From IMG/VR virus record IMGVR_UViG_3300042261_002385, positions 248,001 to 312,000 of that record: a stretch of DNA of 64,000 bases; one strand, written 5' to 3'. Every line of letters starts with the position of its first letter. Position 1 is the stretch's first letter. The notes beneath the pieces are model-generated. The model saw only the letters and a list, made by a program, of their open reading frames with translations, ran no database searches and was not told the DNA's origin. The position numbers were made by a program, and so were the translations under genes. This document shows positions 1,578 to 62,942 of the stretch, piece by piece.

Positions 1578-1606
1578 CTTATATTTTATTTTAATTAGAA
1601 AGTTTT
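1578..1606 (-). promoter_or_regulatory. Class II promoter AAAACT-N17-TATAAG, 4 nt upstream of the clpS ATG
   Basis: Read directly from the sequence. The same architecture recurs before 8 other genes. Confidence 0.55.
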
Positions 1607-2110
1607 TAAAGTCTTGTTTACTACATCAACAACAGTTACGGCACAGGATTGATTTTTTGCCCACTCTTCGAAATGTGGAAGATGGTCTTTTCTATCATCA
1701 TACATAACAAAATGTCTACAACCTGTTTTAATTATCATTTTCTCAAATAATTGTGTTTTAAATTTAAAAGTATCTCCTCCCCAGTTTAGATAGATTTCAT
1801 CAAATTCAAATCCATAATTTTTGAGAATTTTAATTACACCATCTCTCATACCTGGAACTGTATCTAACCTACCAGTGGCCAATATCAAATAACCAGTGGG
1901 GTCAGATTTTGCATCAATATATTTTTTATAAGTCCATTCGTTTTTAGGAGTATCAAATATGTTCATATCTAAAGTTTCTACTTTAGACCACCAACCTCTG
2001 TAAGGCCAAGGTTTTCCAGTTTTTTCTTCCCAAATTTTCATACCTGGTTCAGGTAACATAGTGTGTATAAGTGTATCGTCAAAGTCAAAACAATATAGAG
2101 TTTGGTGCAT
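1595..2110 (-). CDS. HAD-superfamily phosphatase, Swiss-Army-Knife RNA-repair/PNKP-like
   Basis: DFDDTL (DxD), GWW, LATGR, FK and YDDR..H motifs match HAD motifs I-IV. Confidence 0.7.
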   Translation of the reverse strand: MHQTLYCFDFDDTLIHTMLPEPGMKIWEEKTGKPWPYRGWWSKVETLDMNIFDTPKNEWTYKKYIDAKSDPTGYLILATGRLDTVPGMRDGVIKILKNYGFEFDEIYLNWGGDTFKFKTQLFEKMIIKTGCRHFVMYDDRKDHLPHFEEWAKNQSCAVTVVDVVNKTLKTF

Positions 2111-2199
2111 TGCAAATTTTATTTTTACAAATATATATAAAAAAAATTAATGTTAATAAGATTTAAAAAATTATATATAATTAAAAATTACACAATAAA

Positions 2200-2616
2200 A
2201 TGAATTTCAAAATTAATCTTCAAACAATCATAATGTTTATATTGTTAGGCTTTTCAATTTTATTCTTTTCTATGTGGTTTCTAAAAGGAACTGGATATAA
2301 AAAGGAATACAAAAAATTAGAACAAGAATTTCAAAAAATTCAGAAAATCAGAGACTCTCTACAAAAATTAAATATCAAATTGAAAGATGACTTTGATAAA
2401 AGAGAAATAGAAATAAAAAAGAGAGACAGTCTAATTAGGCTAGTCGAAAAAGAATTAATTAGAACTAAGCAAGAACTCAAAGAGGCGAAAAAGGATGTAG
2501 CAAAATGGCAATCCGACTATCAAAATACTAAGAAAAAGATTGAACAACTAAAAAAAGATCCTATAAAAAGAGAAGACGAAGAGTTAATGAAGTCTTTATC
2601 CGAAAAATTAAAATAA
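2200..2616 (+). CDS. Membrane-anchored coiled-coil protein (i-spanin-like)
   Basis: A single N-terminal hydrophobic helix is followed by a Lys/Glu heptad coiled coil. Confidence 0.45.
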   Translation: MNFKINLQTIIMFILLGFSILFFSMWFLKGTGYKKEYKKLEQEFQKIQKIRDSLQKLNIKLKDDFDKREIEIKKRDSLIRLVEKELIRTKQELKEAKKDVAKWQSDYQNTKKKIEQLKKDPIKREDEELMKSLSEKLK

Positions 2617-2619
2617 TAT

Positions 2620-3117
2620 ATGAAATCAATTATCCTAACAACATTATTTATGTTACTCTCAATTGTCTGTATTGGACAGAATTATCCAAGAATTGAAAAA
2701 GACTCACTTGGTAACAAATTTGTAATCATGACATATGATCAGGCACAAAAAATAGATAATGCATTTGAACTTGTAGCTTTATTAGAAAAAGCAGGAGCCG
2801 AGTGTGATAGTCTAAGTCTTTCATACGTAAAAGTTATCAGTAAACTTGAAAAACAAGTCTCTCAGTTAGAAACCGATTTAAAACTTTACAAAGGACAAGT
2901 CATTGATAAAGACAATCAAATAGAGAATTTAACACAAAGACTTAAAAACACCGAAGATGATGCCAAACTTTGTAACGACCAAATATCAATTAGAGATAAA
3001 CAAATAGTATTGCTAAATGATGAAATTAAAAGCCTGAAAACGAAAAGAAATATAGCTTACGGAGTTGGTATAGGTGGAACAATATTAGGAATTTTAGTTG
3101 CTATATTAGTTCATTAA
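2620..3117 (+). CDS. Signal peptide + coiled coil + C-terminal TM protein (spanin-like partner)
   Basis: MKSIILTTLFMLLSIVCIG|Q signal, coiled coil, and C-terminal TM IAYGVGIGGTILGILVAILV. Confidence 0.4.
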   Translation: MKSIILTTLFMLLSIVCIGQNYPRIEKDSLGNKFVIMTYDQAQKIDNAFELVALLEKAGAECDSLSLSYVKVISKLEKQVSQLETDLKLYKGQVIDKDNQIENLTQRLKNTEDDAKLCNDQISIRDKQIVLLNDEIKSLKTKRNIAYGVGIGGTILGILVAILVH

Positions 3118-3174
3118 TGAAAAAAGTCATTTTTTTAATATAATATATACTTTACAAAAAAATCATAATTGAAA

Positions 3175-3816
3175 ATGAAACACATTAGAACATTTGAAAG
3201 TTATCGTATTAGAAAGAATAGAGAAGAAATTATCAAAGAATCTGTTCTTCAAGTAAACGATATCTATAAAGTTAAGACAATGATTGATATTCCACAGTCA
3301 TTAATCAATGCTTATGTGAAAAAAGTGAAAGATACTACAGGTAAAAATCTACGTCAATTTTTTGGTGATGTTGACATCGCTGAAGAAATTGTCAAATTCA
3401 TAAATATGAACAACTTAGACGTTGAGAAACTACCAGGAAACGCACTTATGGGTGGAGCACAAGGTCAAGGACAAAGTCAAGGACAAGCACAGGTTCAAAC
3501 TGACGCTGAAGCTCAGACACAATCACAAGGTCAAGAAGAAGGACAAGCACAAGGACAAGGTCAGGGACAAGCTCAGGGTCAGGGACAAGCACAAGGACAA
3601 GCTCAGGGTCAAGGACAAGCTCAGGGTCAAGGACAAGCTCAGGGTCAAGGACAAGCTCAGGGTCAAGGTCAAGCTCAGGGTCAAGGTCAAGCACAAGGAC
3701 AAGCTCAAGGACAAGCTAAAGAAGAAGAGTTTGAAGAACCACAAGGTCAAGCACAAGGTCAAGCACAAGCCCAGGGTGAAGAAGAAAAACTTCCAGAAGA
3801 AGAGGAAGAAGCTTAA
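3175..3816 (+). CDS. Putative internal head protein with a Gly/Gln low-complexity tail
   Basis: ATG at 3175 gives [10 protein letters not shown], then a ~90 aa globular part, GQAQGQ repeats and an acidic end. Confidence 0.6.
3540..3714 (+). repeat. 18-bp coding tandem repeat (GQAQGQ)n
   Basis: Tandem units of the type cagggtcaaggacaagct. Confidence 0.9.
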
Positions 3817-3837
3817 AAATTACTACAGATATACTTC

Positions 3838-3865
3838 AAAACCCATCAGAAATGATGGGTTTTTT
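3838..3865 (+). terminator. Intrinsic terminator
   Basis: ACCCATCA-GAAA-TGATGGGT followed by a T-run. Confidence 0.85.
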
Positions 3866-3881
3866 ATTTAATATATAATTT

Positions 3882-4496: not shown

Positions 4497-4497
4497 A

Positions 4498-4872: not shown

Positions 4873-4883
4873 AGACTTATATA

Positions 4884-5853: not shown

Positions 5854-5882
5854 CTTATATCAAAAAAAGTCAACAAAGTTAA
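5854..5882 (-). promoter_or_regulatory. Class II promoter TTAACT-N17-TATAAG, 4 nt upstream of the ATG
   Basis: Read directly. Spacing is identical to the clpS promoter. Confidence 0.55.
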
Positions 5883-5918
5883 AAATAAATGTAAGAGATG
5901 ACTTTTTATATATAATTT

Positions 5919-8518: not shown

Positions 8519-8547
8519 TAAACTTTTTTAGTAAATTAATATATAAC
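8519..8547 (+). promoter_or_regulatory. Class II promoter TAAACT-N17-TATAAC overlapping a late-type ATATATA, upstream of the sigma gene
   Basis: Read directly from the sequence. Confidence 0.55.
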
Positions 8548-8598: not shown

Positions 8599-8964
8599 AT
8601 GTATTTAAATAACAAAGACCTCTACGTAGAGATAATCGTATCAAAAGCGCAAGGAAAACTAACAAGAAACGCAGAAAAAATGCTAGAGCTACTAGCTAAG
8701 AAAACAATCAAAAAAATGAGATACTGGTCAAACGACGATAAACTAGACTGCTATCAATCAGGTCTACTAGATATGTTCCAAAATTGGTATAATTTCAATG
8801 AAGAAAAATCAGTAAACGCCTTCGCTTACTTTACAGAGGTATTTAAAAGAGGAATAGCTAAGGGATTCAATGAATTATATAAGAAAAAGGGAGACAATGA
8901 TAATTTAATTAAACTATTATCAATAGAAGGAAGCAACGACGGCCAAGGACTCCATTCAATCTAA
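8599..8964 (+). CDS. gp55: Late-transcription sigma factor, gp55-like
   Basis: YLNNKDL, DCYQSG and NFNEEKSVNAFAYFT parallel T4 gp55 YVNNKEL...NFDETK..NPHAYIT. Confidence 0.85.
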   Translation: MYLNNKDLYVEIIVSKAQGKLTRNAEKMLELLAKKTIKKMRYWSNDDKLDCYQSGLLDMFQNWYNFNEEKSVNAFAYFTEVFKRGIAKGFNELYKKKGDNDNLIKLLSIEGSNDGQGLHSI

Positions 8965-9022: not shown

Positions 9023-10102
9023 CTAAACTGTTTCTTCTACAAGAACGGTGGTCAACATTCTATTAGAAACTAAATATGGATCACAATTGGAAGCTGGTCT
9101 TCTATCTTCAAAATAACCTCTACCATCAACTTGTGCTTGTGCTGGAATTCTAATAGAAGTATCTCGTGTGCTGTGACCATAGCTAAAATCATTAATTCCG
9201 GATGTTTCATGTGCACCGGTCAGTCTTTCTTCATTATGCAATCCATAGACTTCAATGTGTTGGATATGGTTGTTTTGTAATTTTTCCATAGATTTCATTA
9301 TTACATCAATACCACCAGATTGCCTCATATCTTTAGTTGAGAAATTTACGTGACAACCTGTGCCATTCCAATCACCTTTAATTGGCTTAGGATGTAAAGA
9401 TACATTCACATTGTGTCTTTCAGCGACTCTTCCTAAGATATATCTTGACATCCAAAGTTGGTCTGAACCATTTAGTGAAGTAACTGGACCAATTTGATAT
9501 TCCCATTGTCCCAATAATACTTCAGCATTTATACCTGAAATATCAAGTCCTATCTCAATACACTTATCCATGTGTTCTTCAACGATTTCACGTCCAATAA
9601 CTGTATCAGCTCCGATTCCACAATAATAGTCTCCTTGTGGACGAGGAACTATACCAGGTTCAAATCCTAGTGGTAAACCAATACCTTCACCAAAAGGTGT
9701 TAGTGGTTTGTGCGTAAGAGTATACTCTTGTTCCCAACCAAACCACGGAGAATCTGTCTTTGACAAACTATCAATTCCGAGTGATTTGACCGTCTCTTGT
9801 AGTTTTCTTCTGTTATTCGATTTGTGTGGTGTTCCATCTGGATTCAATACCTCACAAAGAACTAATTTATTAGGAATTCCTCTAAATGGATCATCACAAA
9901 CAAAGACAGGTTTCAGAAGACAATCTGTATTCTCGCCTTTACCTGCTTTAGCCTGTAAAGTTGAACTACCATCAAAAGACCACATTGAGTAATTTTCAAC
10001 ATTGTTATCTAATGAAGTCTCTTCAGAGACAATTTTTGTTTTACTTCTGAGTTGTTGGGGCTCAGACCCATCTAACCAAATATACTCTTGTTTAATTTTC
10101 AT
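9023..10102 (-). CDS. glnII: Glutamine synthetase type II
   Basis: EYIWLDG, LRSKT, WSFDGSST, EQEY, INAEV..GQWEYQ, HPKP..GDWNGTGCH, RLTGAHET and YFEDRRPASNCDPY. Confidence 0.95.
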   Translation of the reverse strand: MKIKQEYIWLDGSEPQQLRSKTKIVSEETSLDNNVENYSMWSFDGSSTLQAKAGKGENTDCLLKPVFVCDDPFRGIPNKLVLCEVLNPDGTPHKSNNRRKLQETVKSLGIDSLSKTDSPWFGWEQEYTLTHKPLTPFGEGIGLPLGFEPGIVPRPQGDYYCGIGADTVIGREIVEEHMDKCIEIGLDISGINAEVLLGQWEYQIGPVTSLNGSDQLWMSRYILGRVAERHNVNVSLHPKPIKGDWNGTGCHVNFSTKDMRQSGGIDVIMKSMEKLQNNHIQHIEVYGLHNEERLTGAHETSGINDFSYGHSTRDTSIRIPAQAQVDGRGYFEDRRPASNCDPYLVSNRMLTTVLVEETV

Positions 10103-10120
10103 AAAGTGTTTTTTTTATTT

Positions 10121-10160
10121 TATATATTTTTGAAACAAAGTTGAGTTTGTTCCATATATT
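10121..10160. promoter_or_regulatory. Overlapping divergent class II promoters
   Basis: Minus strand: CAAACT-N17-TATATA (10149-10121). Plus strand: GAAACA-N17-TATATT (10132-10160). Confidence 0.55.
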
Positions 10161-12391: not shown

Positions 12392-12639
12392 TTTTTAAAT
12401 ATTTTATTAAGCTTATACTCTCTTCTATCTTCTACTGTAGTTGGTTCAATGAGAAACTCACCATCACAAATTTTTATATTCCATTTGTTGCCAGTAATAC
12501 TATCACGTATAACAAGTTTCTCAACTACAACAGAACCATCAGACTCTACAACAAGTGAATTAGAACCAGCCGCAGATACTTTAAATAGATCGTCATCTAC
12601 AGAATAGATTACTGAATTATTTTTATATTTTGATGCCAT
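12388..12639 (-). CDS. Hypothetical protein
   Basis: ORF in an operon. Ends RREYKLNKIFKK. Confidence 0.55.
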   Translation of the reverse strand: MASKYKNNSVIYSVDDDLFKVSAAGSNSLVVESDGSVVVEKLVIRDSITGNKWNIKICDGEFLIEPTTVEDRREYKLNKIFKK

Positions 12640-13567
12640 TGTCAGGATTATAATTCATAATTAGTAATTCTACACCTTTAGCTTGTTCTGTTTTCAAATC
12701 AGAATTATTTCCACCTTGAGCAGAACTTCTAAAAACTTCTTTTTCAGTCCATACGTATTTATCTTTAGGTAATAACTCTTCTAAAAGTGGAAAATAATAG
12801 TATGAAAGTGACCAACGACACTTAGTCGTTTTAAGTAGCTCAAGTAATCTTCTGTGAGAAGCAGGTCCAAAAACTCCATCTTTATCAGCTCCATACCAGA
12901 ATAATCTCTTCGCATCATCTTCACCTTTAGCCTCATCAAATCGAGCATAAGGTGGGTCTAAATATAGATAAGTATCTTCAGAATCATATTTATTGATTAA
13001 TTCTTCAAAATCAATATTTAAAAATTCAGTTATAGATTGAAGCTTTTGAGTATATTTGTTTTTCTTTAGTTTGTCAATAAGAACCTCTAATTTTAAACGG
13101 TCTTTATCTTTTTTATAACCATTAAAACCAGCTCCTCTTGGATATACAGAATTATGAGCTGATGTAATGAGAAAAGCATAAATAGCAGCTTTTTCAAAAT
13201 CTCCAATTTCAAAATTCATATCGTCTAGAAAGTCATTCTTTTGGTAATCTTTATAAATTCCTTTATAAAAATCCCATTTTTTAAGAGGATCTGTATCAGT
13301 TGTGAACAGCAATGTATTTTTAAGATTTTCTAAGTAAGGCAAGAATTTTTCAGGTTCAGACGCACACTTATATAAGTTCACCTGGTGACGATTTTTGTCA
13401 TTGTAAATGACTGTATCAAATTTTAGTCGATCGTCATCCATATACGTTCCCATTGAACCAGAGAAGGGTTCTAAATATGTTTTGATTCCTGTTTTAGGAA
13501 TTTTAGTATTGATTAATTCTTGAAACACTGAAGAACTTTTTCCTCCAAAATAACTTATTACTGCCAT
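12623..13567 (-). CDS. dam: D12-class N6-adenine DNA methyltransferase
   Basis: SYFGGKS, YLEPFSGS, YND and the catalytic LDPPY. Confidence 0.92.
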   Translation of the reverse strand: MAVISYFGGKSSSVFQELINTKIPKTGIKTYLEPFSGSMGTYMDDDRLKFDTVIYNDKNRHQVNLYKCASEPEKFLPYLENLKNTLLFTTDTDPLKKWDFYKGIYKDYQKNDFLDDMNFEIGDFEKAAIYAFLITSAHNSVYPRGAGFNGYKKDKDRLKLEVLIDKLKKNKYTQKLQSITEFLNIDFEELINKYDSEDTYLYLDPPYARFDEAKGEDDAKRLFWYGADKDGVFGPASHRRLLELLKTTKCRWSLSYYYFPLLEELLPKDKYVWTEKEVFRSSAQGGNNSDLKTEQAKGVELLIMNYNPDNGIKI

Positions 13568-13573
13568 AGTATT

Positions 13574-14092
13574 TTATTTTAATTTATTTTTAATTTCTTC
13601 TTCTATAGAAGGTTTTACGTTTTGTTGAGAAAGTTCTGTTCTAATTCTCATTAGAATCTTACCTAAGTAATTTAATCCACCATTACCACACTTTGGACAA
13701 GAGCAAGAACCCCAGAAATTATCATGCCAATTATTACCTTCAATTAGTTGTAATTCGCCAGTTTCTAAGAGGTCTTGTGCCAGTTTTTGATTTTTAAACT
13801 TTTCTCTAATTCCCCACTCCATAAATCCAAGTTTTTTCTCTTCCCAATCACTTCTGACCTTAACGACTTTACCGACCTTTTTAGCATCTGACGGATCTTT
13901 GATTCTAGCGACTAATTCTCTAAAATCAGGCGCAGTATAATAAACACCATCGATAAACTGCATTCCAGTGACTTTTAGAGCAACGTAGTAGTGCTCAACA
14001 CTCGGATATGTAATACCTTTATGTTCTATTTCACAGGGATAAAAATTACTTAAGAAAACATATCGACCACGAAATGAATTGATATAACTCAT
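13574..14092 (-). CDS. NADAR (YbiA-like) hydrolase
   Basis: FLSNFY, YPSVEHYY, KF..LL.TG..LIE..D.FWG and N.LGKILM.IR motifs. Confidence 0.9.
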   Translation of the reverse strand: MSYINSFRGRYVFLSNFYPCEIEHKGITYPSVEHYYVALKVTGMQFIDGVYYTAPDFRELVARIKDPSDAKKVGKVVKVRSDWEEKKLGFMEWGIREKFKNQKLAQDLLETGELQLIEGNNWHDNFWGSCSCPKCGNGGLNYLGKILMRIRTELSQQNVKPSIEEEIKNKLK

Positions 14093-14096: not shown

Positions 14097-14124
14097 AATA
14101 TATCAAAGTATATTTAAAAGTTTA
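14097..14124 (-). promoter_or_regulatory. Class II promoter TAAACT-N16-TATATT, 4 nt upstream of the NADAR ATG
   Basis: Read directly from the sequence. Confidence 0.5.
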
Positions 14125-15105: not shown

Positions 15106-15113
15106 AATCTTTG

Positions 15114-15488
15114 TGGAGATGACGATGTACTGCCCATCGTGTCTTCCCTAGCTAACAATAATTATTCATTCACAGGCTTAGAAAGTTTCTCTAAACTTAC
15201 AAAGTAGTTAGTTGAACAACCCATCACTCTAACAATTCTGGTTTCACATTTTAAACTGTGTGATTCAGCTGGAGAATTTTTGCGATAAGCTTAAAAGATT
15301 AAACTACTGCTAGCTCTTCTACCTTAAGCATGTTGTTTTGTAGCGCCGCTACTAAATCTTCACGGGATGCTACTTCATTTGTTTTGCCATTTACGACTTT
15401 TGCCATCTAATTTATTAGTCGGTTACTTGACCATCCGACACCTGCATAATTACCACTACTCTATGAATCTATACTAAAAAACATCCCC
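15114..15488 (-). ncRNA. ssrA: tmRNA (one-piece, ~375 nt)
   Basis: GGGGAUG/CAUCUCC-A acceptor stem with G3.U70, T-arm ACGAUG-GGCAGUA-CAUCGU, P2 GCAGGU/GCCUGU with an AAGCCUGUGAA motif, and a tag frame UAAAU|GGC...UAA (15388-15299). CCA is not encoded. Confidence 0.9.
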
Positions 15489-15539
15489 ATAGTTTTATAA
15501 TTACAAATGTATATATAATATTTGAAAATATAAAAAAGT

Positions 15540-15806
15540 TTAGAAATTTTCAGAACCTTCTTCGAGTTCATACTCATCAGAATCTAAAGAATTTATAATA
15601 TTCTCAGCCTCTTCATAGGAATCATAATTAATCCAAAGAGAACCTTTACCAAATAATTCCTCAGCGTCAACCGCATCTTTATATGTTAAACCATCAGACA
15701 TCATTTTTGGTGTGAGAGCAAATATTCTAAAAGAATCACCAACTCTGTTTATAAAATATTTAACTTTATCGTTACTAAAATCTTCAAATAATTTAATGTA
15801 TTTCAT
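15540..15806 (-). CDS. Small protein with the MKYIKLFEDF N-terminal tag
   Basis: 88 aa, carries the shared N-terminal motif. Confidence 0.65.
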   Translation of the reverse strand: MKYIKLFEDFSNDKVKYFINRVGDSFRIFALTPKMMSDGLTYKDAVDAEELFGKGSLWINYDSYEEAENIINSLDSDEYELEEGSENF

Positions 15807-16402: not shown

Positions 16403-17934
16403 TATCTCAATTCTATTTTTAAGTAAGTTTCACTAAAGAAACAATCATCCGCTATTTTATATTTTGCTAAGATTGTTTGAACTCTTATCAATGCATCATA
16501 TATTTCAGCCATATCAGACTCTTCTAAGTCTAAACTTACAAATATTCTATCGTCACTACCAACTACTTTAACATCTATACCAAAAACATTTTTCTTAACT
16601 TCATTAATTAGTTCTTTGTGTTTTGCAAACAACTCTTGATTGTATCCGACTTTTCTTTTGACTGGAAGATTATTCCAATCAACTTTTATAGAAGCTTCGG
16701 CTAATTTTTTCAAATAAGTTATATTCTGCATTTCAGTTCCTCTATGTTCATTATAATATCCAACAGATATGTTCGTGCACTCAGCTATATCTTCCATTAG
16801 AGATGCTGAATCAGTATAAACTCCAGTCGTATCTAAAGAAAGATTTAAACCATTTTTGTTATATTCATCACAAAGAGCTTGTGCAAAATCATTTGAACAA
16901 CATTGTCTACCTAATTGGTGAGTAATAACTGACGTGGTTCTTCTTCTATCAAAAGAAACACAATATTTAACATCTGTCAAATAGTCACATTTATCATATA
17001 CAGATGAAAGTGCATTTGAACCAATTCCTCCTCTTTCTTCTCCAATGAAGAAGTAGTAGATACCAGGAACATTGTTAGCCATCATATAAAGCATTACTGT
17101 AGTTCCAGCTTTATCATCGGCTCCAAGTATACTTGAACCATCTGTATAAATTATTTCATCACCTGAACCAGTCTTGATTAGTCTAAATGAATATCCCTCT
17201 TCCTCAACCCTTCCATTTGCTTGAAATAAACGAGTTGTTTTTTGTTCTCTGTCTGCAGTGTCTAAGTGACAAGTAAACATTACCTTTTGTTTATCATTAC
17301 CAATAATCTTATAATAATTACCGACTCTATCTTGTTTTAAATCAGGTAAGAATTTAAGCACTTCTTTTTCATGTCTACAATCAGAAAAATGTGGGTAAGT
17401 TTTAGTAGTAAGTGAAAGAAAAGTTGCTTTAACATCCTTCGGATTGTAACTAAATTCAGGAACAACTATTCTTTGAGCGGACGTGGTATCTTCTTCACCA
17501 ATATTATCAGCTACGATTGCGTTATATTGATGGATAAATGATTTAATCTCATCTTCTGTTAGTAGACCGGGCCAGTAATATCTAAAAAATTTACCAATCT
17601 TCATATCATACTTTTTATCAGCTATTTTCACTTCAAAACAGTATGGTTTTTTTGAAATAGTGACATCACTAATTCCCAATCCATTAAAATATTTAGAACC
17701 CTCTTCTCCTAACCAAAGCATTTCAAAGGCAAGATAGTTGTCATTATCTTCCATATTTTTTAATACTTTACAGAGGTCTTTTGATAATTTTATTTTGATA
17801 CCAGTATCTTTTGTAGATGACTTTGTGTCAAAAATTTCTTCTTTTGATTTATAACCACCACCTGTGTAATTACGTTCACCTGGGAAAGATTGAGTTCCAG
17901 CTTCAAATAGTTGATTATATTTAAATAATTCCAT
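16402..17934 (-). CDS. Zinc peptidase (M28/M20/M42 clan) with an unknown N-terminal domain
   Basis: CHLDT, LGADDKAG, GEERGGIGS, SFDRR, YTDS, NISVGYYNEH..E motifs. Confidence 0.85.
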   Translation of the reverse strand: MELFKYNQLFEAGTQSFPGERNYTGGGYKSKEEIFDTKSSTKDTGIKIKLSKDLCKVLKNMEDNDNYLAFEMLWLGEEGSKYFNGLGISDVTISKKPYCFEVKIADKKYDMKIGKFFRYYWPGLLTEDEIKSFIHQYNAIVADNIGEEDTTSAQRIVVPEFSYNPKDVKATFLSLTTKTYPHFSDCRHEKEVLKFLPDLKQDRVGNYYKIIGNDKQKVMFTCHLDTADREQKTTRLFQANGRVEEEGYSFRLIKTGSGDEIIYTDGSSILGADDKAGTTVMLYMMANNVPGIYYFFIGEERGGIGSNALSSVYDKCDYLTDVKYCVSFDRRRTTSVITHQLGRQCCSNDFAQALCDEYNKNGLNLSLDTTGVYTDSASLMEDIAECTNISVGYYNEHRGTEMQNITYLKKLAEASIKVDWNNLPVKRKVGYNQELFAKHKELINEVKKNVFGIDVKVVGSDDRIFVSLDLEESDMAEIYDALIRVQTILAKYKIADDCFFSETYLKIELR

Positions 17935-21287: not shown

Positions 21288-23387
21288 TTAAATGTTTTTG
21301 AATCTTTCTAAAATTGCTTGAGCTTCTTTATCAGAAAGTTTATCCTCTTGGATAAGAGCTTCGTGAGAAACTAATTTTTTAGTAACAGATTCATTCTTTT
21401 TGAGATTTCTAGTCAACCAGAAATGCTCAACTTGTGATTCAGTCTTCAATACATCTTCTGGATAAAGTCTAGCTTGTGACAAGATAGATTTTTTAGAAGT
21501 GTCGTTCAACTGTTCCCAGATTGGCTTAACGTTTTCAGGCATCAATCTGATTACTCTTTCTTCAAGAGATTCATTCTTTGTAGACAGTGCTTCAGCAATC
21601 AATGTAAGAACTTCCTTCTGTGTAAAATAACTTCTTTCGTTTATGTGAAGTTTAACAGTTTCTTGTTCATCGTTAGATAATGCATAAAAGCTATCAACTT
21701 GTGACTTGTTTAAGAATTTTAAGAAATTCAAGTCAGTTGTTTCAGAAACTTTACGTTTTTTAGCTTCTTCAATTAATTTATTAATAGACTCAGATAATTC
21801 AGAATCATCGTGACCATGAACCTCATGAGATTCGTGTCCATATTTTTCTTCGTTGTCATCATCATTGTTTTCGTGAGAATAAGCTTCTTCGTCATGTGAA
21901 GCAGGAACTCCGTGATAATTTTCTTCATTATCATCATCGTTGTTGTGATTCTCTTCTTCGTGATTTTCAAAACCATAAGCTGATAGCGAAGCGAAAGCCT
22001 CTTCATCATGGTTTTCAAATAATTTACCACCTTTAGAATTTAATTTTTCAACAATCATTCCTTGATAAGAAATTGATCTATCAAGATTTTCAGCGATATA
22101 CTCAGAGTAGGCGATGTTATCATCTAAATGCTCCGCGATATACTCAGAGTAAGCGATGTTACCTTCAACATGCTCAGCTAAGTATTCAGAATACGCGATA
22201 GAGTTATCAACGTGCTCAGCTAAGTATTCAGAGTAAGCGATGTTTTTATCAAGATTCTCAGCAATATACTCAGAGTAAGCGATGTTTTTATCAAGATTCT
22301 CAGCAATATACTCAGAGTAAGCGATGTTCTTATCAAGGTTTTCTGCTAAGTATTCTGAGTAAGAAATGTTTTTGTCTAAGTTTTCAGCGATATACTCAGA
22401 ATAAGAGATATTCTTATCTAAGTTTTCAGCTAGATACTCAGAATATTCAATATTCTTATCTAAATTTTCAGCAACATACTCAGTATAGTTAATTGCTTTT
22501 TCAAGATTTTCTGCTAAATAGTCATTATGTTTAGCAAGTTTTTCAGTTGTGTTTCTAAGAGATTTGTTCTCATTAACAACAACTTGGATTTTTTCAGCTA
22601 AGTAGTCAAGATATTTAACTACTTGTGAATTAGTTGAGTTCAATTCTTCGTAGTATTCAAGTAATTGCTCTAATTTCTTAGGAGCCATATTACCTTTAGA
22701 AATTGCACTCTTAACTTCTTTTTTAGTTGAAGCAATCTCGTTTACTAAATACTTTGAATAATCAGTCAACTGTTTCTTAGTAACAAAGTCGTTTCTGTTC
22801 ATGTTGAATAATTCATTTATTTTTGACTCGTCGGACATTTCATATATCCTAAAGTTAGATTTTGGGTTTGTATAACCTAAAGACTCATTAAGTGTTTTTA
22901 CTGACATTTTTGCTGAAGCAAAACCTGGATCAGCTACAATGTCATATGTGAATAATTTTTTCAATGAAACAGATCCGTCAGATTCAGTGATACCAGCCGC
23001 TCTAGAAGAAACGAATACCGGACAACCATCATCAACTAATGCTTTCGCTTCTTTACCCCAATAAGTGCTAAGAAGTCTAATTTCACCAGCAACAATGTTT
23101 TGTTCTTTAAGATAGTTTGCTTTAGTGATAATGTGTGATGCTCTTGCTAAAGAAGTGTCAAAAACATCTGGGTGATCAAACTCACCATAAACAGCTCCTA
23201 AACTGTTCATTCTTTCATTCAACTCATCCAACGCTGGTAAGAATCTGTCTGCTGTATAGATACGTTCATTACGGTTTTTCACTCCAAATTCAGTGAAAGT
23301 TCCACCTAAAACGTAATCTTTTTTACCAGATGCATTTTCTCGTATTAGAGCATTCGTTGAATTTTCTACGATTAATACTGATTTCAT
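21288..23387 (-). CDS. gp21: Prohead protease (gp21-like) fused to a scaffold/core protein
   Basis: KNRNERIY, GEFDHP, SHII, VSSRAAG and TYDIVADPGF in the N-terminal ~170 aa, followed by a long coiled-coil region. Confidence 0.92.
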   Translation of the reverse strand: MKSVLIVENSTNALIRENASGKKDYVLGGTFTEFGVKNRNERIYTADRFLPALDELNERMNSLGAVYGEFDHPDVFDTSLARASHIITKANYLKEQNIVAGEIRLLSTYWGKEAKALVDDGCPVFVSSRAAGITESDGSVSLKKLFTYDIVADPGFASAKMSVKTLNESLGYTNPKSNFRIYEMSDESKINELFNMNRNDFVTKKQLTDYSKYLVNEIASTKKEVKSAISKGNMAPKKLEQLLEYYEELNSTNSQVVKYLDYLAEKIQVVVNENKSLRNTTEKLAKHNDYLAENLEKAINYTEYVAENLDKNIEYSEYLAENLDKNISYSEYIAENLDKNISYSEYLAENLDKNIAYSEYIAENLDKNIAYSEYIAENLDKNIAYSEYLAEHVDNSIAYSEYLAEHVEGNIAYSEYIAEHLDDNIAYSEYIAENLDRSISYQGMIVEKLNSKGGKLFENHDEEAFASLSAYGFENHEEENHNNDDDNEENYHGVPASHDEEAYSHENNDDDNEEKYGHESHEVHGHDDSELSESINKLIEEAKKRKVSETTDLNFLKFLNKSQVDSFYALSNDEQETVKLHINERSYFTQKEVLTLIAEALSTKNESLEERVIRLMPENVKPIWEQLNDTSKKSILSQARLYPEDVLKTESQVEHFWLTRNLKKNESVTKKLVSHEALIQEDKLSDKEAQAILERFKNI
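22065..22526 (-). repeat. Eleven tandem 42-bp (14-aa) repeats of the type SEY(I/L)AENLDKNIAY
   Basis: 462 bp = 11 x 42, read from the protein and the DNA. Confidence 0.92.
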
Positions 23388-28371: not shown

Positions 28372-28423
28372 TTTTTAGTTCAATTTGATTTTATATATTA
28401 AATTTTAGATATTCCTCCAGAAT

Positions 28424-34420: not shown

Positions 34421-36053
34421 GGTAAACTTTATCTAAAATTGAAAGACCAGCTGCTTGTTTAGTAATTGGTTTTTCAAATATTCCTGTTTTATACATATCT
34501 AACTTCTCAGCGAAAAGTAAATCTGTTACGTTCCACTTGCAACTTTGATACATTTTATCAATTATGTCGAATGAACGTCTTGGCACTAAATAAGCATGAG
34601 CTCCATAGAACTTATTTACTACCCAATATCCTTCTTTTTTATCTACAATATTAGTATTGTTGTGATATCCAAATGAAAACATTAATAAATTTTCGTTTTT
34701 ATTTAGAATATCAATTGCAAAATTCATTTTATCTATAAATTCTTGATAACTTACGTCTAAAATAGCATCACATTCGAATATCATAATGAAATCACTTTCA
34801 GAATTAACTCCTTGATAAAATGCTGACTTGTGAGCTAAATAACATCCATAATGACCAGGAGTCAACTTTCCGCCTGGTTCCATAGATATTTTGTCAGGAT
34901 ATTCACAGTTATCTGAAGGTGGTAATTCGGTATATCTTTTGTTAATACAGGTATTATATTCTATACCCCAATCAGGAAGTTTTGAAAGAGATATTAAAGA
35001 AGAAATTTCTCTATCAGAGTCAATATCAGTCAGCATATGATAAGCTGAAATTTTATGTTCTGGTATTTTACTAAAACTCTCTAAGACTACACTTTTAGTT
35101 TTCTCAACTACTGACATTTGTTTATTTTTATATGAGGTTGATAGAATCTGTTTAATTTTGTCGACATTTTCTTGTTTATCATCAGACATAAAACTGACAT
35201 TTTCATAAGTGAAGATGTCAGAATAGTTTGGTAACCACTTCATAAGAACAGGCAACTTGTAATTTAAAGCCTCACTTATACAAAGTGGTTTATTTTCTAA
35301 ATTTGATGTGAACAGAAACAAATCACATACAGTGTAGAACTTATAAACGTCACTTCTTTCACCCCAAACTTGACAGTTTTTAGGTTTAGTTTCCATTAGT
35401 GGTTTCCAATAATACTCAAAGTTTCCTGCTTGATTACCTAAAAAATGAAATTGATAATCATCACTAAACTCTTTAGCAATTTCAAATATTTCACTTTGAT
35501 TTTTTCCTTGTGTAAAAAGGCCAACATTCAATATGTGTTTTTTTGATGGATCTAAACCGAGCTCTGTTTGATAGATTTTCTTTAATTCATCACTATTAAT
35601 TGGATATTCGATTAAGTCAAAATCTGATTTTGGATTAAAATACTGAGAAAGATTATACTTAGAGACAAAATGTAGTTTATCTGGTGTTGTCAATTTTTCG
35701 AGAGGATTGAATAGAGTGCCGTGTGTGGTTTCACAAATCTTATAATTTGAATTATATAATTTTATCAATGAGTCATATGGAATAAATGTCTCTGGAAATT
35801 CTTCAAAGTGAATAACATCAGGATTAATTTCATCAACGATAGAAATAAATTTATCCTTATCATTAAGAGTAATTAGTTTATGACCAAGAAAGCTTTCTAT
35901 TTTATTTCTTTGAACAACAAGTTGACCTCCTGTTATATTATCCCACTCAATACACCAAATATCAAATTCGTCAATTAAAACTTCTATTTTTTTTAACAAA
36001 AATTGTGGTAAACCACCTGTTGATAAATGTGGAGTAATAAATAATAATCTCAT
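34404..36053 (-). CDS. GT4 glycosyltransferase fused to a GT25-like domain
   Basis: PHLSTGG, NVG..KNQ, DLFLFTS.LE.KP..SEAL (GT4), then GHYGCYLAH, FECD and GAHAYLV (GT25-like). Confidence 0.8.
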   Translation of the reverse strand: MRLLFITPHLSTGGLPQFLLKKIEVLIDEFDIWCIEWDNITGGQLVVQRNKIESFLGHKLITLNDKDKFISIVDEINPDVIHFEEFPETFIPYDSLIKLYNSNYKICETTHGTLFNPLEKLTTPDKLHFVSKYNLSQYFNPKSDFDLIEYPINSDELKKIYQTELGLDPSKKHILNVGLFTQGKNQSEIFEIAKEFSDDYQFHFLGNQAGNFEYYWKPLMETKPKNCQVWGERSDVYKFYTVCDLFLFTSNLENKPLCISEALNYKLPVLMKWLPNYSDIFTYENVSFMSDDKQENVDKIKQILSTSYKNKQMSVVEKTKSVVLESFSKIPEHKISAYHMLTDIDSDREISSLISLSKLPDWGIEYNTCINKRYTELPPSDNCEYPDKISMEPGGKLTPGHYGCYLAHKSAFYQGVNSESDFIMIFECDAILDVSYQEFIDKMNFAIDILNKNENLLMFSFGYHNNTNIVDKKEGYWVVNKFYGAHAYLVPRRSFDIIDKMYQSCKWNVTDLLFAEKLDMYKTGIFEKPITKQAAGLSILDKVYHEERY

Positions 36054-36068: not shown

Positions 36069-36097
36069 ATTATAAATAAAAAAATTGACTTTGTTTA
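36069..36097 (-). promoter_or_regulatory. Class II promoter TAAACA-N17-TATAAT driving the glycosyltransferase operon
   Basis: Read directly from the sequence. Confidence 0.6.
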
Positions 36098-42935: not shown

Positions 42936-43032
42936 TTATACAATTCTTTTTTCACTTTCCAAAAGAAATCAACATTATATATTAATTTAGTAAGACCTAA
43001 AAAGACTTATATTAATTTTTTCTGATCAAATA

Positions 43033-59294: not shown

Positions 59295-59366
59295 ACACTC
59301 TATATATAAAAATTAGTAATTCATTTTATTTTCAAAATTAGAGTTGACCTGATTAATATATACTTT

Positions 59367-60269: not shown

Positions 60270-60270
60270 A

Positions 60271-60296
60271 AAAACCTCTCAATCTTGAGAGGTTTT
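60271..60296. terminator. Bidirectional terminator
   Basis: AAAACCTCTCA-ATCT-TGAGAGGTTTT between convergent genes. Confidence 0.85.
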
Positions 60297-60313
60297 ATTT
60301 TTTTTATATCATA

Positions 60314-60913: not shown

Positions 60914-60923
60914 ATTTTATAAT

Positions 60924-61637
60924 TTATTTTTTGAAATCTACGAAACTTTTTATTCCTCTCATCTCATCTTCTAAATCTTTGTTAGCTAAATGACCTTCAG
61001 TTTCTTCATGAGATGGCTCTTCATAATGTGTGTAATTGAGGTCTTCACTTGGAACATCGTGACCTGCAACAAAGTTAAAAACATGTTCAATGTTCTCAGC
61101 TGCTACAGAGATGTGGTCTGAAGCCCAATCGTGCTCAGACAACATGTTATCTAAAGTGTGCTCATCCATTTCTAGCATTTCATCTACTAATCTTTTGATA
61201 GTCTCTAAATTTGAGAAAAACATATAATTTTGAGTTTCTTGATGTTCTCTAAGTCTTTTAACTGTTCTAGATCTCTTGTAGTTTCTAGACTCACTTAGTA
61301 ATGCTTCATCGTTATTATAAGCATCCTGTTCCTCGTGATCCTTACACATAAGTCTCAATTCTTCATCTGAACACATCTCTAATTCATCTTCTGAGTAACC
61401 ACATCTGCAAAGGTAGTTACACATTGATTCTCTGTCCATAGAATTCATATTTTCGTTATGTGAATTCATATGAGAGTGATCATCGTGACTATCAGCCATA
61501 GTTCTACACATCATTTCTAACTCATCATCAGACTTGTCATGTAATTCATGCATGCTACAACCACATACATTACATAAGTATTTACACATCTCTTCTCTAT
61601 CTTGAGAATAAGATTCAAATTTTTTAATTAACCTCAT
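60924..61637 (-). CDS. Cys/Met/His-rich protein with an internal duplication and the MRLIKKFESY tag
   Basis: Two DRExMCxYLC..C..EL...SDxEL.MC repeats and a C-terminal HDWASDHI domain. Confidence 0.6.
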   Translation of the reverse strand: MRLIKKFESYSQDREEMCKYLCNVCGCSMHELHDKSDDELEMMCRTMADSHDDHSHMNSHNENMNSMDRESMCNYLCRCGYSEDELEMCSDEELRLMCKDHEEQDAYNNDEALLSESRNYKRSRTVKRLREHQETQNYMFFSNLETIKRLVDEMLEMDEHTLDNMLSEHDWASDHISVAAENIEHVFNFVAGHDVPSEDLNYTHYEEPSHEETEGHLANKDLEDEMRGIKSFVDFKK

Positions 61638-61669
61638 ATTAAGTGTTATTTTTTAGTATATATTAAATT

Positions 61670-62815
61670 TTAAAATAAAATATTGACCACCTCAGGATAG
61701 TATTTTGTCATCTCAATATTTCTATCTTCGTATTTAATAACCGACAAAACATATCTCATAGCATTTAGTCTACCTATTTTTTTATCATTTGAATTTATTA
61801 TGACCCAAGGTGACAAAGCCGAAGAAGTTTGTTGAAACATTTGTCTTTTAAAGTTACCTATGATTTCCCATTTGTCTAAAACCTTAGCGTCGTTCGGAGA
61901 AAACTTCCAATATTTTAATGGGGATTTTTGTCTTAACTCAAATCTCTTTATTTGTTTATCCTGAGTAATAGAAAACCAAAACTTAATTAAAATAACACCA
62001 CTTCTTATTAGCTTTTCTTCCCAATCTACAACATTGTCCATAAAGTCTTCATACTGTTCTTCACTACAATATCCCATAGCTGGTTCTACTACTGCTCTAT
62101 TATACCAACTTCTATCAAAGAAAACAATTTCGCCAGATTTCGGTAAATGTTTTTCATATCTTTTGAACCAATTATTTTTTTCTTCTTCAGTTGGAACCCC
62201 AAGAGCGACAACTCTAAAACCATTTGGATTGAGATACTCAACAAACCTTTTTATTGTCGAACCTTTACCAGCAGCATCTCTACCCTCAAAAACTATCGCT
62301 ACCTTTTGACCGGTTTTTTTAACCCATTCTTGTAGTTTTAGTAATTCAACTTGTAGCTGATATTTCTCTGACTCATATTGTCTTCTACCAATTATTGATC
62401 CTTCACCTTCAAATTCATCAAAGTGGTCTTCTTTCTTACCCTGTTTGTGTATCTGGTCAATTCTCACACCAATAGAAACGTAGTAATCATCAAAAGCTTC
62501 TCTAACTTTTCTTTTAGTATTTCTTTTCTTTAGTTCTAAAAGTTGATTAATTTTACGAAGAAAAGCTTCAATATTCAATTCAGAGACAACTTCTTCAGTA
62601 AATTCATTAGTAAGTTCTCTAATAACAACTTTGACATCAATTGAGTCGAAATTCCTATACTCAACTTTGTTTGTTTCAAAATTATATATGATATTGGCTA
62701 AGATGTATGTTCTATATTCACCGAGTCTAAATATCAGATTTTGTTTCAAAGTCTCTAATGACTTCTCATCCATATCTTCAATCCAAATCTCCTCTAAAAT
62801 CTTTTTATAATTCAT
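61670..62815 (-). CDS. ppk2: Polyphosphate kinase 2 with a ~120-aa N-terminal extension
   Basis: FEGRDAAGKG, FDRSWYNRA..E..MG, KFWFSI, KYWKFSP.D and PWVII.SNDKK motifs. Confidence 0.95.
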   Translation of the reverse strand: MNYKKILEEIWIEDMDEKSLETLKQNLIFRLGEYRTYILANIIYNFETNKVEYRNFDSIDVKVVIRELTNEFTEEVVSELNIEAFLRKINQLLELKKRNTKRKVREAFDDYYVSIGVRIDQIHKQGKKEDHFDEFEGEGSIIGRRQYESEKYQLQVELLKLQEWVKKTGQKVAIVFEGRDAAGKGSTIKRFVEYLNPNGFRVVALGVPTEEEKNNWFKRYEKHLPKSGEIVFFDRSWYNRAVVEPAMGYCSEEQYEDFMDNVVDWEEKLIRSGVILIKFWFSITQDKQIKRFELRQKSPLKYWKFSPNDAKVLDKWEIIGNFKRQMFQQTSSALSPWVIINSNDKKIGRLNAMRYVLSVIKYEDRNIEMTKYYPEVVNILF

Positions 62816-62913
62816 AAATAGATAAAAATGTTTATTTATATATTATTTTCAACAGTTGAAAAATGATAATAAAGACATTGACTTATTAATTTTCTGCTAA
62901 TTAAAAATTGACC

Positions 62914-62942
62914 TAAACAAATTATGTCATATCCGATAAAAT
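62914..62942 (+). promoter_or_regulatory. Class II promoter TAAACA-N17-TAAAAT upstream of the uvsY operon
   Basis: Read directly from the sequence. Confidence 0.55.

What the first reader, a model, noticed from the sequence alone, without database searches (positions are those of the whole stretch)
1578..62942. Second promoter class, xAAAC(T/A)-N17-TATAAT-like, marks plausible early/middle genes
A -35-like hexamer (TAAACT, TAAACA, AAAACT, TTAACT, CAAACT or GAAACA) sits 17 nt, or 16 in two cases, before a TA(T/A)(A/T)xx -10 box. It occurs at clpS, the clamp loader, gp55, glnII, ORF 10177, the NADAR-dam operon, tmRNA, the glycosyltransferase operon and the uvsY operon. Clamp loader, gp55 and uvsY are pre-late genes in T4. 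The motif is neither TTGACA nor the Bacteroidota TTTG/TAnnTTTG consensus, implying a phage-encoded or alternative sigma or activator. It predicts that the glycosylation enzymes are made before the fibres.
Basis: partly seen in the sequence, partly recalled or inferred. Interest (0 to 1): 0.6.

Follow-up and report, generated by a model that had tools for sequence, protein, structure and literature searches.

The report
Middle-gene promoters for a phage ECF sigma
A 436-kb phage of Flavobacteria-like hosts has a real, conserved second promoter type (AAAC(T/A)-N16/17-TATAA) in front of replication, nucleotide-metabolism and late-sigma genes, and the phage's own ECF-type sigma factor most likely reads it, forming a three-step sigma cascade.

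Summary
All nine strings exist. AAAC[TA] before TATA[AT] peaks sharply at 16-17 nt, in intergenic DNA only. Outside the window the count is 29 against 9.9 expected (p 6e-7). In a 476-kb relative it is 57 against 12.9 (p 1.5e-19). The motif is conserved while its spacer diverges upstream of gp55 (30/35 variants), clamp loader (30/32), glnA-like (36/38) and clpS (13/18). The ORF-10177 site is not conserved (0/11). The 'tmRNA' site overlaps a host-type promoter.

The genome has three promoter classes:
- Host Bacteroidota type: TTTG-N19/20-TAnnTTTG.
- This class.
- A dominant TTAATATATA class in front of capsid, portal, protease and fibre genes.

It encodes three sigmas: an ECF type (SigW-like), a host-derived RpoD-like one, and gp55.

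The -35 (AAC core plus T-tract) is the ECF hallmark. The same promoter sits upstream of the ECF sigma gene in 10 of 11 orthologues. Near-complete relatives without the RpoD-like sigma keep the class.

Best reading: host sigma A, then phage ECF sigma, then gp55. Timing is inferred from gene content only; no RNA data were usable. This is a new variant of the known phage sigma-cascade theme.

The parts
1578..1606 (-). Class B promoter of clpS: -35 AAAACT at 1606-1601, -10 TATAAG at 1583-1578, ATG at 1573 (TATAW-N5-ATG, leaderless geometry).
   Evidence: ClpS is Pfam PF02617, E 4e-18. The motif is present in 13 of 18 distinct upstream variants in relatives.
5854..5882 (-). Class B promoter of the clamp-loader gene: -35 TTAACT at 5882-5877, -10 TATAAG at 5859-5854. 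The true start is ATG 5849-5847, not the TTG at 5876.
   Evidence: sequence. phrog_168 clamp loader, E 1e-49. AAACTT-N15-17-TATAW/TAAAA is kept in 30 of 32 distinct upstream variants.
8519..8547 (+). Class B promoter of the gp55-like late sigma gene (8599-8964): -35 TAAACT at 8519-8524, -10 TATAAC at 8542-8547. A terminator hairpin lies just upstream.
   Evidence: phrog_234 late sigma factor, E 4e-7. 30 of 35 distinct upstream variants keep AAACTT and TATAAC at fixed spacing while the spacers diverge.
10117..10149 (-). Class B promoter of the glutamine-synthetase-like gene (9023-10102). Two overlapping AAC motifs (AAACT, CAACTT) and two candidate -10 boxes (TATATA, TAAAAT), so the register is ambiguous.
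   Evidence: Pfam Gln-synt_C/N. 36 of 38 distinct upstream variants keep AAAC(A/T)-N-ATAAAAT.
10132..10160 (+). Probably a chance match on the opposite strand of the glnA-like promoter.
   Evidence: The string is present. The motif is found in 0 of 11 relatives' upstream regions.
14097..14124 (-). Class B promoter of the NADAR (13574-14092) and DNA methyltransferase (12623-13567) operon: -35 TAAACT, N16, -10 TATATT. ATG at 14092 (leaderless geometry).
   Evidence: Pfam NADAR, E 1e-24. phrog_56 methyltransferase. The motif is in 6 of 11 distinct variants.
15504..15542 (-). Composite promoter of a structured RNA gene: TAAACT (15542-15537), N16, TATTAT (15520-15515). It overlaps a host-type -7 box, TACATTTG (15511-15504), whose -33 is degenerate here (TTTA).
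   Evidence: AAACTTTTT and ATATTATATATAC are invariant in 7 relatives. Three relatives carry a perfect TTTG-N19-TAnnTTTG.
15111..15488 (-). tmRNA-like RNA. The 5' GGGGAUG pairs with the 3' CAUCUCC (G3:U), followed by ACAA. It has a T-arm-like hairpin, and a terminator follows.
   Evidence: Read directly. Compensatory changes in relatives: GGGGAAG/CUUCUCC, swapped T stems, and one relative ending in CCACCA. Not called by ARAGORN or Rfam.
36069..36097 (-). Class B promoter of the glycosyltransferase operon (34404-36053 and downstream genes): -35 TAAACA, N17, -10 TATAAT. ATG is 16 nt downstream.
   Evidence: phrog_2170 glycosyltransferase, E 2e-9. Conserved in the closest relative only, 1 of 4.
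62914..62942 (+). Class-B-like promoter of a two-gene operon (62955-63407 unknown; 63394-63888 UvsY-like): -35 TAAACA, N17, -10 TAAAAT.
   Evidence: phrog_231 UvsY-like, E 5e-5, for the second gene only. No relatives were found, so conservation could not be tested.
8599..8964 (+). gp55-like late sigma gene. It is a target of class B and the presumed reader of the TTAATATATA class.
   Evidence: phrog_234. Weak Sigma70_r2 hit. 311 relatives in IMG/VR.

Best explanation
The motif is a genuine promoter class. Its consensus is (t/a)AAAC(T/a)tt, then 16-17 nt counted from the hexamer, then aTATA(A/t)a. An A lies 10 nt and a purine 12 nt after the first T of the -10 box, which marks the likely start site. 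In eight cases that A is the A of the ATG, so those mRNAs would be leaderless.

The class is most likely read by host core RNA polymerase carrying the phage's own ECF-type (group 4, SigW/RpoE-like) sigma factor. That gene lies outside the window at G000:82057-82656(-).

The inferred cascade has three steps:
1. Host sigma A reads TTTG-N19/20-TAnnTTTG promoters. One of these heads the operon that contains the ECF sigma gene.
2. The ECF sigma then reads roughly 35-50 AAAC-type promoters. These include its own promoter, replication, recombination and nucleotide-metabolism genes, Clp components, and the gp55 gene.
3. gp55 then reads the abundant TTAATATATA promoters in front of capsid, portal, protease and fibre genes.

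Shown: the motif, its spacing, its intergenic restriction, its conservation, the sigma gene repertoire, and the gene content of each class. Inferred: which sigma reads which class, the start sites, and the timing.
For: Fixed-spacing enrichment occurs in intergenic DNA only, and it replicates in independent genomes.

The geometry is promoter-like: A at +10, purine at +12, and TATAW-N5-ATG or a 17-30 nt gap to the start codon.

Phylogenetic footprints with diverged spacers are seen at gp55, clamp loader, glnA-like and clpS.

The genome encodes an ECF sigma with Pfam r2 + r4_2. Its best NCBIfam matches are Sig70_bacteroi1 and SigW, and its best PDB match is B. subtilis SigW 5wuq at E 6e-15.

According to PMC5758882, ECF promoters share an AAC core in the -35, often followed by a T-tract (tgaAACntttt). 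They have 14-17 bp spacers and are typically found upstream of the sigma's own operon. Class B has AAAC plus a T-tract. It sits upstream of the ECF sigma gene in G000, in 10 of 11 orthologues at 54-94% identity, and in G001.

Elimination: near-complete relatives G001 (476 kb, 97%), G006 (385 kb, 95%) and G007 (344 kb, 91%) have only the ECF sigma and gp55, with no RpoD-like sigma. The positive control rings in G000. G001 nevertheless shows the strongest class B signal, plus the other two classes.

The RpoD-like sigma has region 2.4 identical to Crocinitomicaceae primary sigma. Class B also lacks the T at -7 that group-1 sigmas need.

None of the 24 annotated class B downstream genes is structural. 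The TTAATATATA class fronts the major head protein, protease, portal and fibre genes.
Against: There is no expression or start-site data. The only runs found are probably DNA and hold fragments of relatives.

The -10 box (TATAA) is unlike the CGT-type -10 of the best-studied ECF sigmas. It shares register and geometry with the TTAATATATA class, so one -10 reader for both classes is not excluded.

No anti-sigma gene lies next to the ECF sigma; the next gene is ClpP.

The presence of AAAC and of the TAA extension are statistically independent rather than mutually exclusive.

One 175-kb relative has the gp55 class B promoter but no detectable ECF sigma. It is a linear fragment.

A host ECF sigma or a non-sigma activator cannot be excluded by sequence alone.
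Confidence: 0.6

Rival explanations
1. One promoter family, one reader. On this view the AAAC sites are ordinary TATATA-type (gp55-read) promoters that also carry an upstream auxiliary element, such as an UP-like or activator site, and they do not form a separate temporal class.
For: Both classes share the same -10 register and the same bimodal distance to the start codon: TATAW-N5-ATG, or about 17-26 nt. The window's gp55 promoter also contains TTAATATATAA. AAAC and the TAA extension are statistically independent. The TTAATATATA class is A-rich at the same upstream offset.
Against: In relatives the gp55 promoter keeps AAACTT and TATAAC but not the TTAA extension. gp55-type sigmas lack a region 4 that could read a -35 at a fixed 16-17 nt. 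gp55 cannot be the only reader of its own gene's promoter. Gene content differs sharply between the classes. The C at the fourth position is absent from the TTAATATATA class (13 of 207).
Confidence: 0.13
2. A host factor reads the motif. This could be a host ECF sigma (Bacteroidota encode many), or host sigma A redirected by a phage activator bound at AAAC, analogous to T4 MotA/AsiA sigma appropriation.
For: The -35-like element replaces the host TTTG at about the same position. The RNA-gene promoter interleaves AAACTTTTT with a host-type TTTG/TAnnTTTG promoter. One fragmentary relative has the motif at gp55 without a detectable ECF sigma.
Against: No AsiA or MotA family match exists in the genome. 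The -10 lacks the TTTG of the host -7 element. A phage ECF sigma is conserved across the clade and carries the same promoter upstream, which is the usual ECF autoregulatory arrangement (PMC5758882).
Confidence: 0.15
3. The phage's RpoD-like 286-aa sigma (G000:414577-415437) reads the motif through an altered region 4.2.
For: It has regions 1.2, 2, 3 and 4. Its region 4.2 differs from the host type at the position equivalent to E. coli R584 (TRER becomes GQER; residue role from my own knowledge). A 17-nt spacing and a TATAAT-like -10 are classical for group 1 sigmas.
Against: It is absent from near-complete relatives G001, G006 and G007, which keep the class, with a positive control. Its region 2.4 is identical to Flavobacteriales primary sigma, which reads TAnnTTTG. 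Class B has T at the -7-equivalent position in only 9 of 34 sites.
Confidence: 0.04
4. Compositional artefact: in AT-rich intergenic DNA, A-rich and TATA-like words co-occur by chance.
For: One of the nine sites, ORF 10177, is not conserved.
Against: The spacing-specific peak uses other spacings as an internal control. It has p 6e-7 in G000 outside the window and p 1.5e-19 in G001, with no peak in coding DNA. The boxes are conserved while the spacers diverge.
Confidence: 0.02

Closest known systems
ECF (group 4) sigma-dependent promoters, e.g. B. subtilis SigW (tGAAACnTTTt-N16-CGTA) and E. coli RpoE (GGAACTT-type -35; the latter from my own knowledge)
   Same: AAC core in the -35, followed by a T-tract. 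Fixed short spacer. Strong adherence to consensus. The same promoter lies upstream of the sigma's own gene. The cognate sigma is a two-domain r2 + r4_2 protein whose best PDB match is SigW.
   Different: The -10 is TATAA, not CGT-like. No adjacent anti-sigma gene. The sigma is phage-encoded and appears to drive a developmental stage rather than an envelope-stress response. Many targets are leaderless.
Phage-encoded sigma cascades: Bacillus phage SPO1 (host sigma A, then phage sigmas for middle and late; PMC13401047 abstract) and coliphage phiEco32 gp36 (PMC12276001)
   Same: Early genes use the host primary sigma. A phage-encoded sigma then redirects host core polymerase to its own promoter class for later genes.
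   Different: In phiEco32 a single distant sigma homologue reads a -10-centred AATGTA for both middle and late genes, helped by gp79. Here an ECF-type sigma with a bipartite promoter appears to sit above a T4-type gp55 late sigma.
T4 middle promoters (MotA box at -30 plus sigma-70 -10, through AsiA/MotA sigma appropriation) and T4 late promoters (TATAAATA read by gp55)
   Same: Same gene logic: clamp loader, gp32, recombination and nucleotide-metabolism genes and gp55 itself lie behind a pre-late promoter class. A single extended AT-rich -10 (here TTAATATATA) fronts the structural genes.
   Different: No MotA or AsiA homologue. The upstream element is AAAC(T/A) at -35 spacing, not TGCTTtA at -30. 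The host is Bacteroidota, whose sigma A reads TTTG/TAnnTTTG.
Huge phages of the Mahaphage clade (Al-Shayeb et al. 2020, PMC7162821) and group 2 jumbo phages (Iyer et al. 2021, PMC7824862)
   Same: The nearest database relatives are 634-642-kb uncultured phages. Those papers report phage sigma-70s, minimal gp55-like sigmas, gp33, tmRNAs and Bacteroidetes hosts.
   Different: In the passages I retrieved by term search, neither paper describes promoter classes, an ECF-type sigma, or its regulon in these phages.

Membership tests
ECF sigma-dependent promoter / regulon | -35 element with a conserved AAC core, often followed by a T-tract | tested here: met
   AAAC is the top position-specific distal word. 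T or A follows in most sites. Orthologous promoters read AAACTTTT. Definition taken from PMC5758882.
ECF sigma-dependent promoter / regulon | Fixed spacer in the 14-17 bp range | tested here: met
   There is a sharp peak at 16-17 nt between AAACW and TATAW, and none at other spacings from 8 to 27.
ECF sigma-dependent promoter / regulon | Group-specific -10, CGT-like in the best-studied groups | tested here: not met
   The -10 is aTATA(A/t)a. ECF -10 elements are group-specific, so this lowers the resemblance to SigW/M/X but does not exclude the class.
ECF sigma-dependent promoter / regulon | A cognate ECF sigma gene (regions 2 and 4 only) in the same genome | tested here: met
   A 199-aa protein at G000:82057-82656(-) with Sigma70_r2 + r4_2. 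TIGR02937 scores 74 bits against a cut-off of 42.9. SigW is the best PDB hit.
ECF sigma-dependent promoter / regulon | Autoregulatory promoter of the same type upstream of the sigma gene | tested here: met
   AAACT-N16-TATAA lies 67 nt upstream of the start codon. It is kept in 10 of 11 orthologues and in G001.
ECF sigma-dependent promoter / regulon | Co-transcribed anti-sigma factor | tested here: not met
   The next gene downstream is a ClpP protease (Pfam CLP_protease, E 2e-26). No anti-sigma was identified.
ECF sigma-dependent promoter / regulon | Transcription depends on that sigma | not testable with these tools
   This needs in vitro transcription or a reporter assay. No RNA data were available.
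T4-type middle promoter (MotA/AsiA sigma appropriation) | MotA box near -30 with MotA and AsiA encoded by the phage | tested here: not met
   No PF09114 or PF09010 match in the genome. The upstream element is AAAC(T/A), not TGCTTtA.
Bacteroidota sigma A promoter | TTTG at -33 and TAnnTTTG at -7, 19-20 nt apart | tested here: not met
   This class exists separately: 24 strict intergenic sites, with a spacing peak at 19-20. It does not coincide with the AAAC sites, except for the composite RNA-gene promoter.
T4-type late promoter (gp55) | A single extended AT-rich -10 with no -35 element | tested here: not met
   Class B needs a -35 at fixed spacing. The TTAATATATA class, in front of the capsid, portal and protease genes, fits this definition instead.
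Canonical sigma-70 promoter | TTGACA-N17-TATAAT with T at -7 | tested here: not met
   TTGAC shows no spacing peak. T occupies the -7-equivalent position in only 9 of 34 sites.

The most novel reading that the evidence does not exclude
In a widespread clade of freshwater huge phages of Flavobacteriales (Mahaphage-related, 340-480 kb), the T4 MotA/AsiA middle-transcription device is replaced by a phage-encoded ECF-type sigma with its own bipartite promoter, AAAC(T)TT-N16-TATAA. This sigma autoregulates and switches on the gp55 late sigma, giving a three-sigma developmental cascade: host sigma A, then phage ECF sigma, then gp55. A large share of the transcripts would be leaderless.
Probability: 0.55. 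Interest if true: 0.65.

Novelty: new variant of a known kind. Interest (0 to 1): 0.55.

Why it matters
Huge phages are known almost only from metagenomes, and their gene-expression programmes are uncharted. This work gives a sequence-level, testable map of three promoter classes and their likely sigma factors for a whole clade. The map allows temporal classes (early, middle, late) to be assigned to hundreds of unknown genes by promoter type alone. It identifies the likely master switch for the late sigma gp55. It also shows an ECF-type sigma, normally a stress-response device, used as a viral developmental regulator in Bacteroidota, whose promoter grammar differs from that of model bacteria. 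The promoter and sigma pair would also be an orthogonal expression part for Flavobacteria and Bacteroidota.

Tried and rejected
- **Expression data.** The look-up of sequencing runs gave two 'RNA?' aquatic runs with a 5-6% word share. Read laying showed short contigs, probably DNA of relatives, with no starts or strand information, so there is no verdict on expression.
- **tmRNA detection.** ARAGORN on the window and on 10 relatives' loci, and Rfam at gathering and at E up to 1, returned no tmRNA. The tmRNA-like reading therefore rests on direct inspection and on compensatory changes.
- **Compensatory promoter elements.** I tested whether the -35 AAAC and the TTAA/TAA upstream extension are mutually exclusive, as in extended-10 logic. 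They are not (odds ratio 0.6-0.9, not significant).
- **A fourth promoter class.** A blind dyad search for another class, such as a GC-containing ECF -10, found nothing convincing.
- **uvsY-operon relatives.** None were found in IMG/VR, so that site could not be footprinted.
- **Clamp-loader error.** My first clamp-loader footprint used a start coordinate one base off. It was redone in the correct frame, and the figure (9 of 18) should be ignored.
- **Taxonomy of RpoD-like homologues.** The listing of cluster members gave no taxonomy. The genome-contig scan did.
- **MotA/AsiA.** Searches were negative.
- **Gene calling.** Gene calls are my own greedy longest-ORF calls under code 11, with 94% coding. 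Some starts are too far upstream, so a few 'coding' promoter hits are really intergenic. The host-type promoter at G000:85684 is one example.

Full report
**Context**

The window is bases 248001-312000 of a single 436,265-bp viral contig. It is 31% G+C and 94% coding under the standard code. Its nearest database relatives are 634-642-kb uncultured 'huge phages'. That set was described by Al-Shayeb et al. 2020, who placed their largest genomes in the Bacteroidetes-infecting Mahaphage clade (PMC7162821).

A phage-borne RpoD-like sigma is 52-55% identical to the primary sigma of Crocinitomicaceae, Fluviicola and other Flavobacteriales. This points to a freshwater Flavobacteriales host.

I therefore tested the core, AAAC[TA] followed by TATA[AT], as a function of spacing.

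- In oriented upstream regions the count peaks at 17 nt (15) and 16 nt (10), against about 3 elsewhere.
- With the window excluded, so that the hypothesis is tested on unseen data, intergenic counts are 14 and 15 against a mean of 4.9 at the other spacings from 8 to 27. That is 29 observed against 9.9 expected, p 6e-7. Coding DNA is flat.
- A blind scan of all 4-mers at all offsets upstream of intergenic TATAW gives AAAC at exactly this offset as the strongest distal signal (z 7.3), followed by AACT and TAAA.
- The peak recurs in nine diverged relatives' loci (17 and 9 against about 3).
- It also recurs in a whole 476-kb relative, G001 (35 and 22 against 6.4 per spacing; p 1.5e-19).
- Relaxing to AACW-N16/17-TAWAW gives about 50 sites above background in this genome.

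**Anatomy**

Aligned sites give (t/a)AAAC(T/a)tt ... aTATA(A/t)a. An A lies 10 nt (27 of 34 sites) and a purine 12 nt (29 of 34) after the first T of the -10 box.

Distances to the start codon are bimodal. Eight sites have TATAW-N5-ATG, so the conserved A is the A of the ATG, which is leaderless geometry. Most of the others lie 17-30 nt upstream.

At the clamp-loader gene this geometry corrects the start codon to ATG 5849-5847.

**Conservation**

Upstream of orthologues in IMG/VR contigs the two boxes are kept at constant spacing while the spacer diverges.

| Gene | Distinct upstream variants keeping the motif |
|---|---|
| gp55 | 30 of 35 |
| Clamp loader | 30 of 32 |
| glnA-like | 36 of 38 |
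| clpS | 13 of 18 |
| NADAR | 6 of 11 |
| Glycosyltransferase | 1 of 4 |
| ORF 10177 | 0 of 11 (probably chance) |

The site before the RNA gene is conserved in 7 of 7 relatives. However, it interleaves with a host-type promoter, TTTG-N19-TAnnTTTG, which is perfect in three relatives and degenerate here.

The uvsY-operon site could not be footprinted. Only the second gene of that operon has a weak UvsY-like match.

**The genome's promoter repertoire**

Three classes emerge.

- **Class A** is the canonical Bacteroidota sigma A type, TTTG-N19/20-TAnnTTTG. It has 24 strict intergenic sites and a sharp spacing peak. Apart from the composite RNA-gene promoter at 15504-15542, which is degenerate here, none is intergenic in the window.
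- **Class C** is the dominant signal, TTAATATATA(A). ATATATA occurs in 110 of 215 upstream regions. In the window it fronts the major head protein, prohead protease, portal, both giant fibre-like ORFs and several others. It resembles T4's gp55-read TATAAATA.

**Gene content**

Class B fronts these genes:

- RNR small subunit, gp32-like SSB, thioredoxin
- an XPD-like helicase and an Mre11-like phosphoesterase
- M16 and zinc peptidases, and FKBP
- ClpS, clamp loader and GlnA-like
- NADAR plus a DNA methyltransferase
- a glycosyltransferase operon
- the gp55-like sigma
- an ECF sigma

None of the 24 annotated targets is structural. It remains an inference, because the only sequencing runs found were uninformative.

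**Who reads it?**

The genome has three sigma-family genes:

- a 199-aa ECF type (r2 + r4_2), whose best matches are Bacteroidetes-type ECF and SigW, with PDB best hit SigW 5wuq at E 6e-15
- a 286-aa RpoD/RpoS-like protein
- the 121-aa gp55-like protein in the window

Four lines of evidence favour the ECF sigma.

1. ECF promoters are defined by an AAC core in the -35, often followed by a T-tract (tgaAACntttt), with 14-17-bp spacers (PMC5758882). Class B reads AAAC(T)TTT at that position.
2. ECF sigmas usually have their own promoter type upstream of their operon. Class B sits 67 nt upstream of the ECF gene here, in 10 of 11 orthologues at 54-94% identity, and in G001.
3. Near-complete relatives G001, G006 and G007 carry only the ECF sigma and gp55. 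The RpoD-like gene is absent, with G000 as positive control. G001 nonetheless has all three promoter classes. That leaves host sigma A for class A, the ECF sigma for class B, and gp55 for class C.
4. The RpoD-like sigma has a region 2.4 identical to Flavobacteriales primary sigma. Class B lacks the T at -7 that group 1 sigmas require.

A host-type promoter at G000:85684 heads the operon that runs into the ECF gene. This would give a plausible way to start the cascade.

**Caveats**

- The TATAA -10 is not CGT-like.
- It shares register with class C.
- There is no adjacent anti-sigma; ClpP follows the ECF gene.
- AAAC and the TTAA extension are independent rather than exclusive.
- One fragmentary relative has the gp55 promoter but no detectable ECF gene.
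- No MotA or AsiA homologue exists. This argues against a T4-style appropriation mechanism but not against an unknown activator.

**Comparison with the known**

Phage sigma cascades are established. Examples are SPO1, phiEco32 gp36 and T4 gp55. Jumbo and huge phages are known to encode minimal and RpoD-like sigmas. My literature searches found no description of promoter classes, or of an ECF-type sigma regulon, in this clade.

I therefore rate the finding as a new variant of a known kind: an ECF-type sigma placed between host sigma A and gp55.

**Verdict**

| Claim | Confidence or status |
|---|---|
| The observation | Confirmed |
| It is a real promoter class | About 0.9 |
| The phage ECF sigma reads it | About 0.6 |
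| It marks pre-late genes | Plausible, untested |

Of the nine sites, one (ORF 10177) is rejected, one (RNA gene) is composite, and two (glycosyltransferase, uvsY operon) are weakly supported.

Noticed in passing
window-wide, e.g. 16418-16426(-), 21418-21426(-), 28395-28403(-), 42987-42995(-); genome-wide about 200 sites: The dominant intergenic motif is TTAATATATA(A). ATATATA occurs in 110 of 215 upstream regions, 19-fold over background. It fronts the major head protein, protease, portal and giant fibre ORFs. It is probably the gp55-type late promoter of this clade. The coordinates given are approximate.
   Followed up: partly
e.g. window 3882, 5919, 17934(-), 60269 region; genome-wide about 30-35 genes: Many genes have TATATA followed by exactly 4 nt and then ATG (TATAW-N5-ATG). 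This implies leaderless mRNAs that start at the A of the start codon. The same geometry is seen in eight class B promoters.
   Followed up: partly
window 15111-15488 (-): A roughly 378-nt structured RNA with a tmRNA-like tRNA domain. The 5' GGGGAUG pairs with the 3' CAUCUCC (G3:U). It has a T-arm hairpin, compensatory changes in relatives, and one relative ending in CCACCA. ARAGORN and Rfam miss it in the window, and ARAGORN also misses it in 10 relatives' loci.
   Followed up: partly
G000:82657-82761 (outside the window); L032-L042 around 9900-10000: The long leader of the ECF sigma gene carries two or three copies of an (A)ACGGCA(A) word. The word recurs in most orthologues' leaders despite divergence elsewhere. 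It could be an operator or an RNA element controlling the sigma.
   Followed up: no
G000:414577-415437 (-), outside the window: A 286-aa RpoD-like sigma, 52-55% identical to Crocinitomicaceae/Fluviicola primary sigma. Region 2.4 is identical, and region 4.2 is altered (TRER to GQER). It is absent from near-complete relatives G001, G006 and G007, so it is probably a lineage-specific acquisition from the host lineage, and it gives a clue to the host.
   Followed up: partly
window 1289-1573 (-); G000:81465-82031 (-): Phage-encoded Clp components: ClpS in the window behind a class B promoter, and ClpP immediately downstream of the ECF sigma gene, where an anti-sigma would normally lie.
   Followed up: no
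G000, about 27 sites, e.g. 37219(-), 69253(-), 419044(+): Canonical Bacteroidota sigma A promoters (TTTG-N19/20-TAnnTTTG, usually followed by TA) cluster in 0-100 kb, 156-206 kb and 355-435 kb. Several drive what look like tRNA genes. Apart from the composite RNA-gene promoter at 15504-15542 (degenerate here), none is intergenic in the window.
   Followed up: partly
window 2111-2199 and 5877-5918: Short divergent intergenic regions carry back-to-back ATATATA boxes that serve genes on both strands. At 5877-5918 the class C box for the + strand gene abuts the -35 of the clamp-loader class B promoter.
   Followed up: no
window 61670-62815 (-), 9023-10102 (-): Auxiliary metabolic genes: a polyphosphate kinase 2 (PPK2, E 7e-80) behind a TTAATATATA promoter, and a short glutamine-synthetase-like protein behind a class B promoter.
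   Followed up: no
L066, L074, L092, L118 (upstream of gp55): In a minority of relatives the gp55 gene has a different upstream promoter: a TATAAT-like box with no AAAC -35. This suggests promoter turnover in one sublineage.
   Followed up: no
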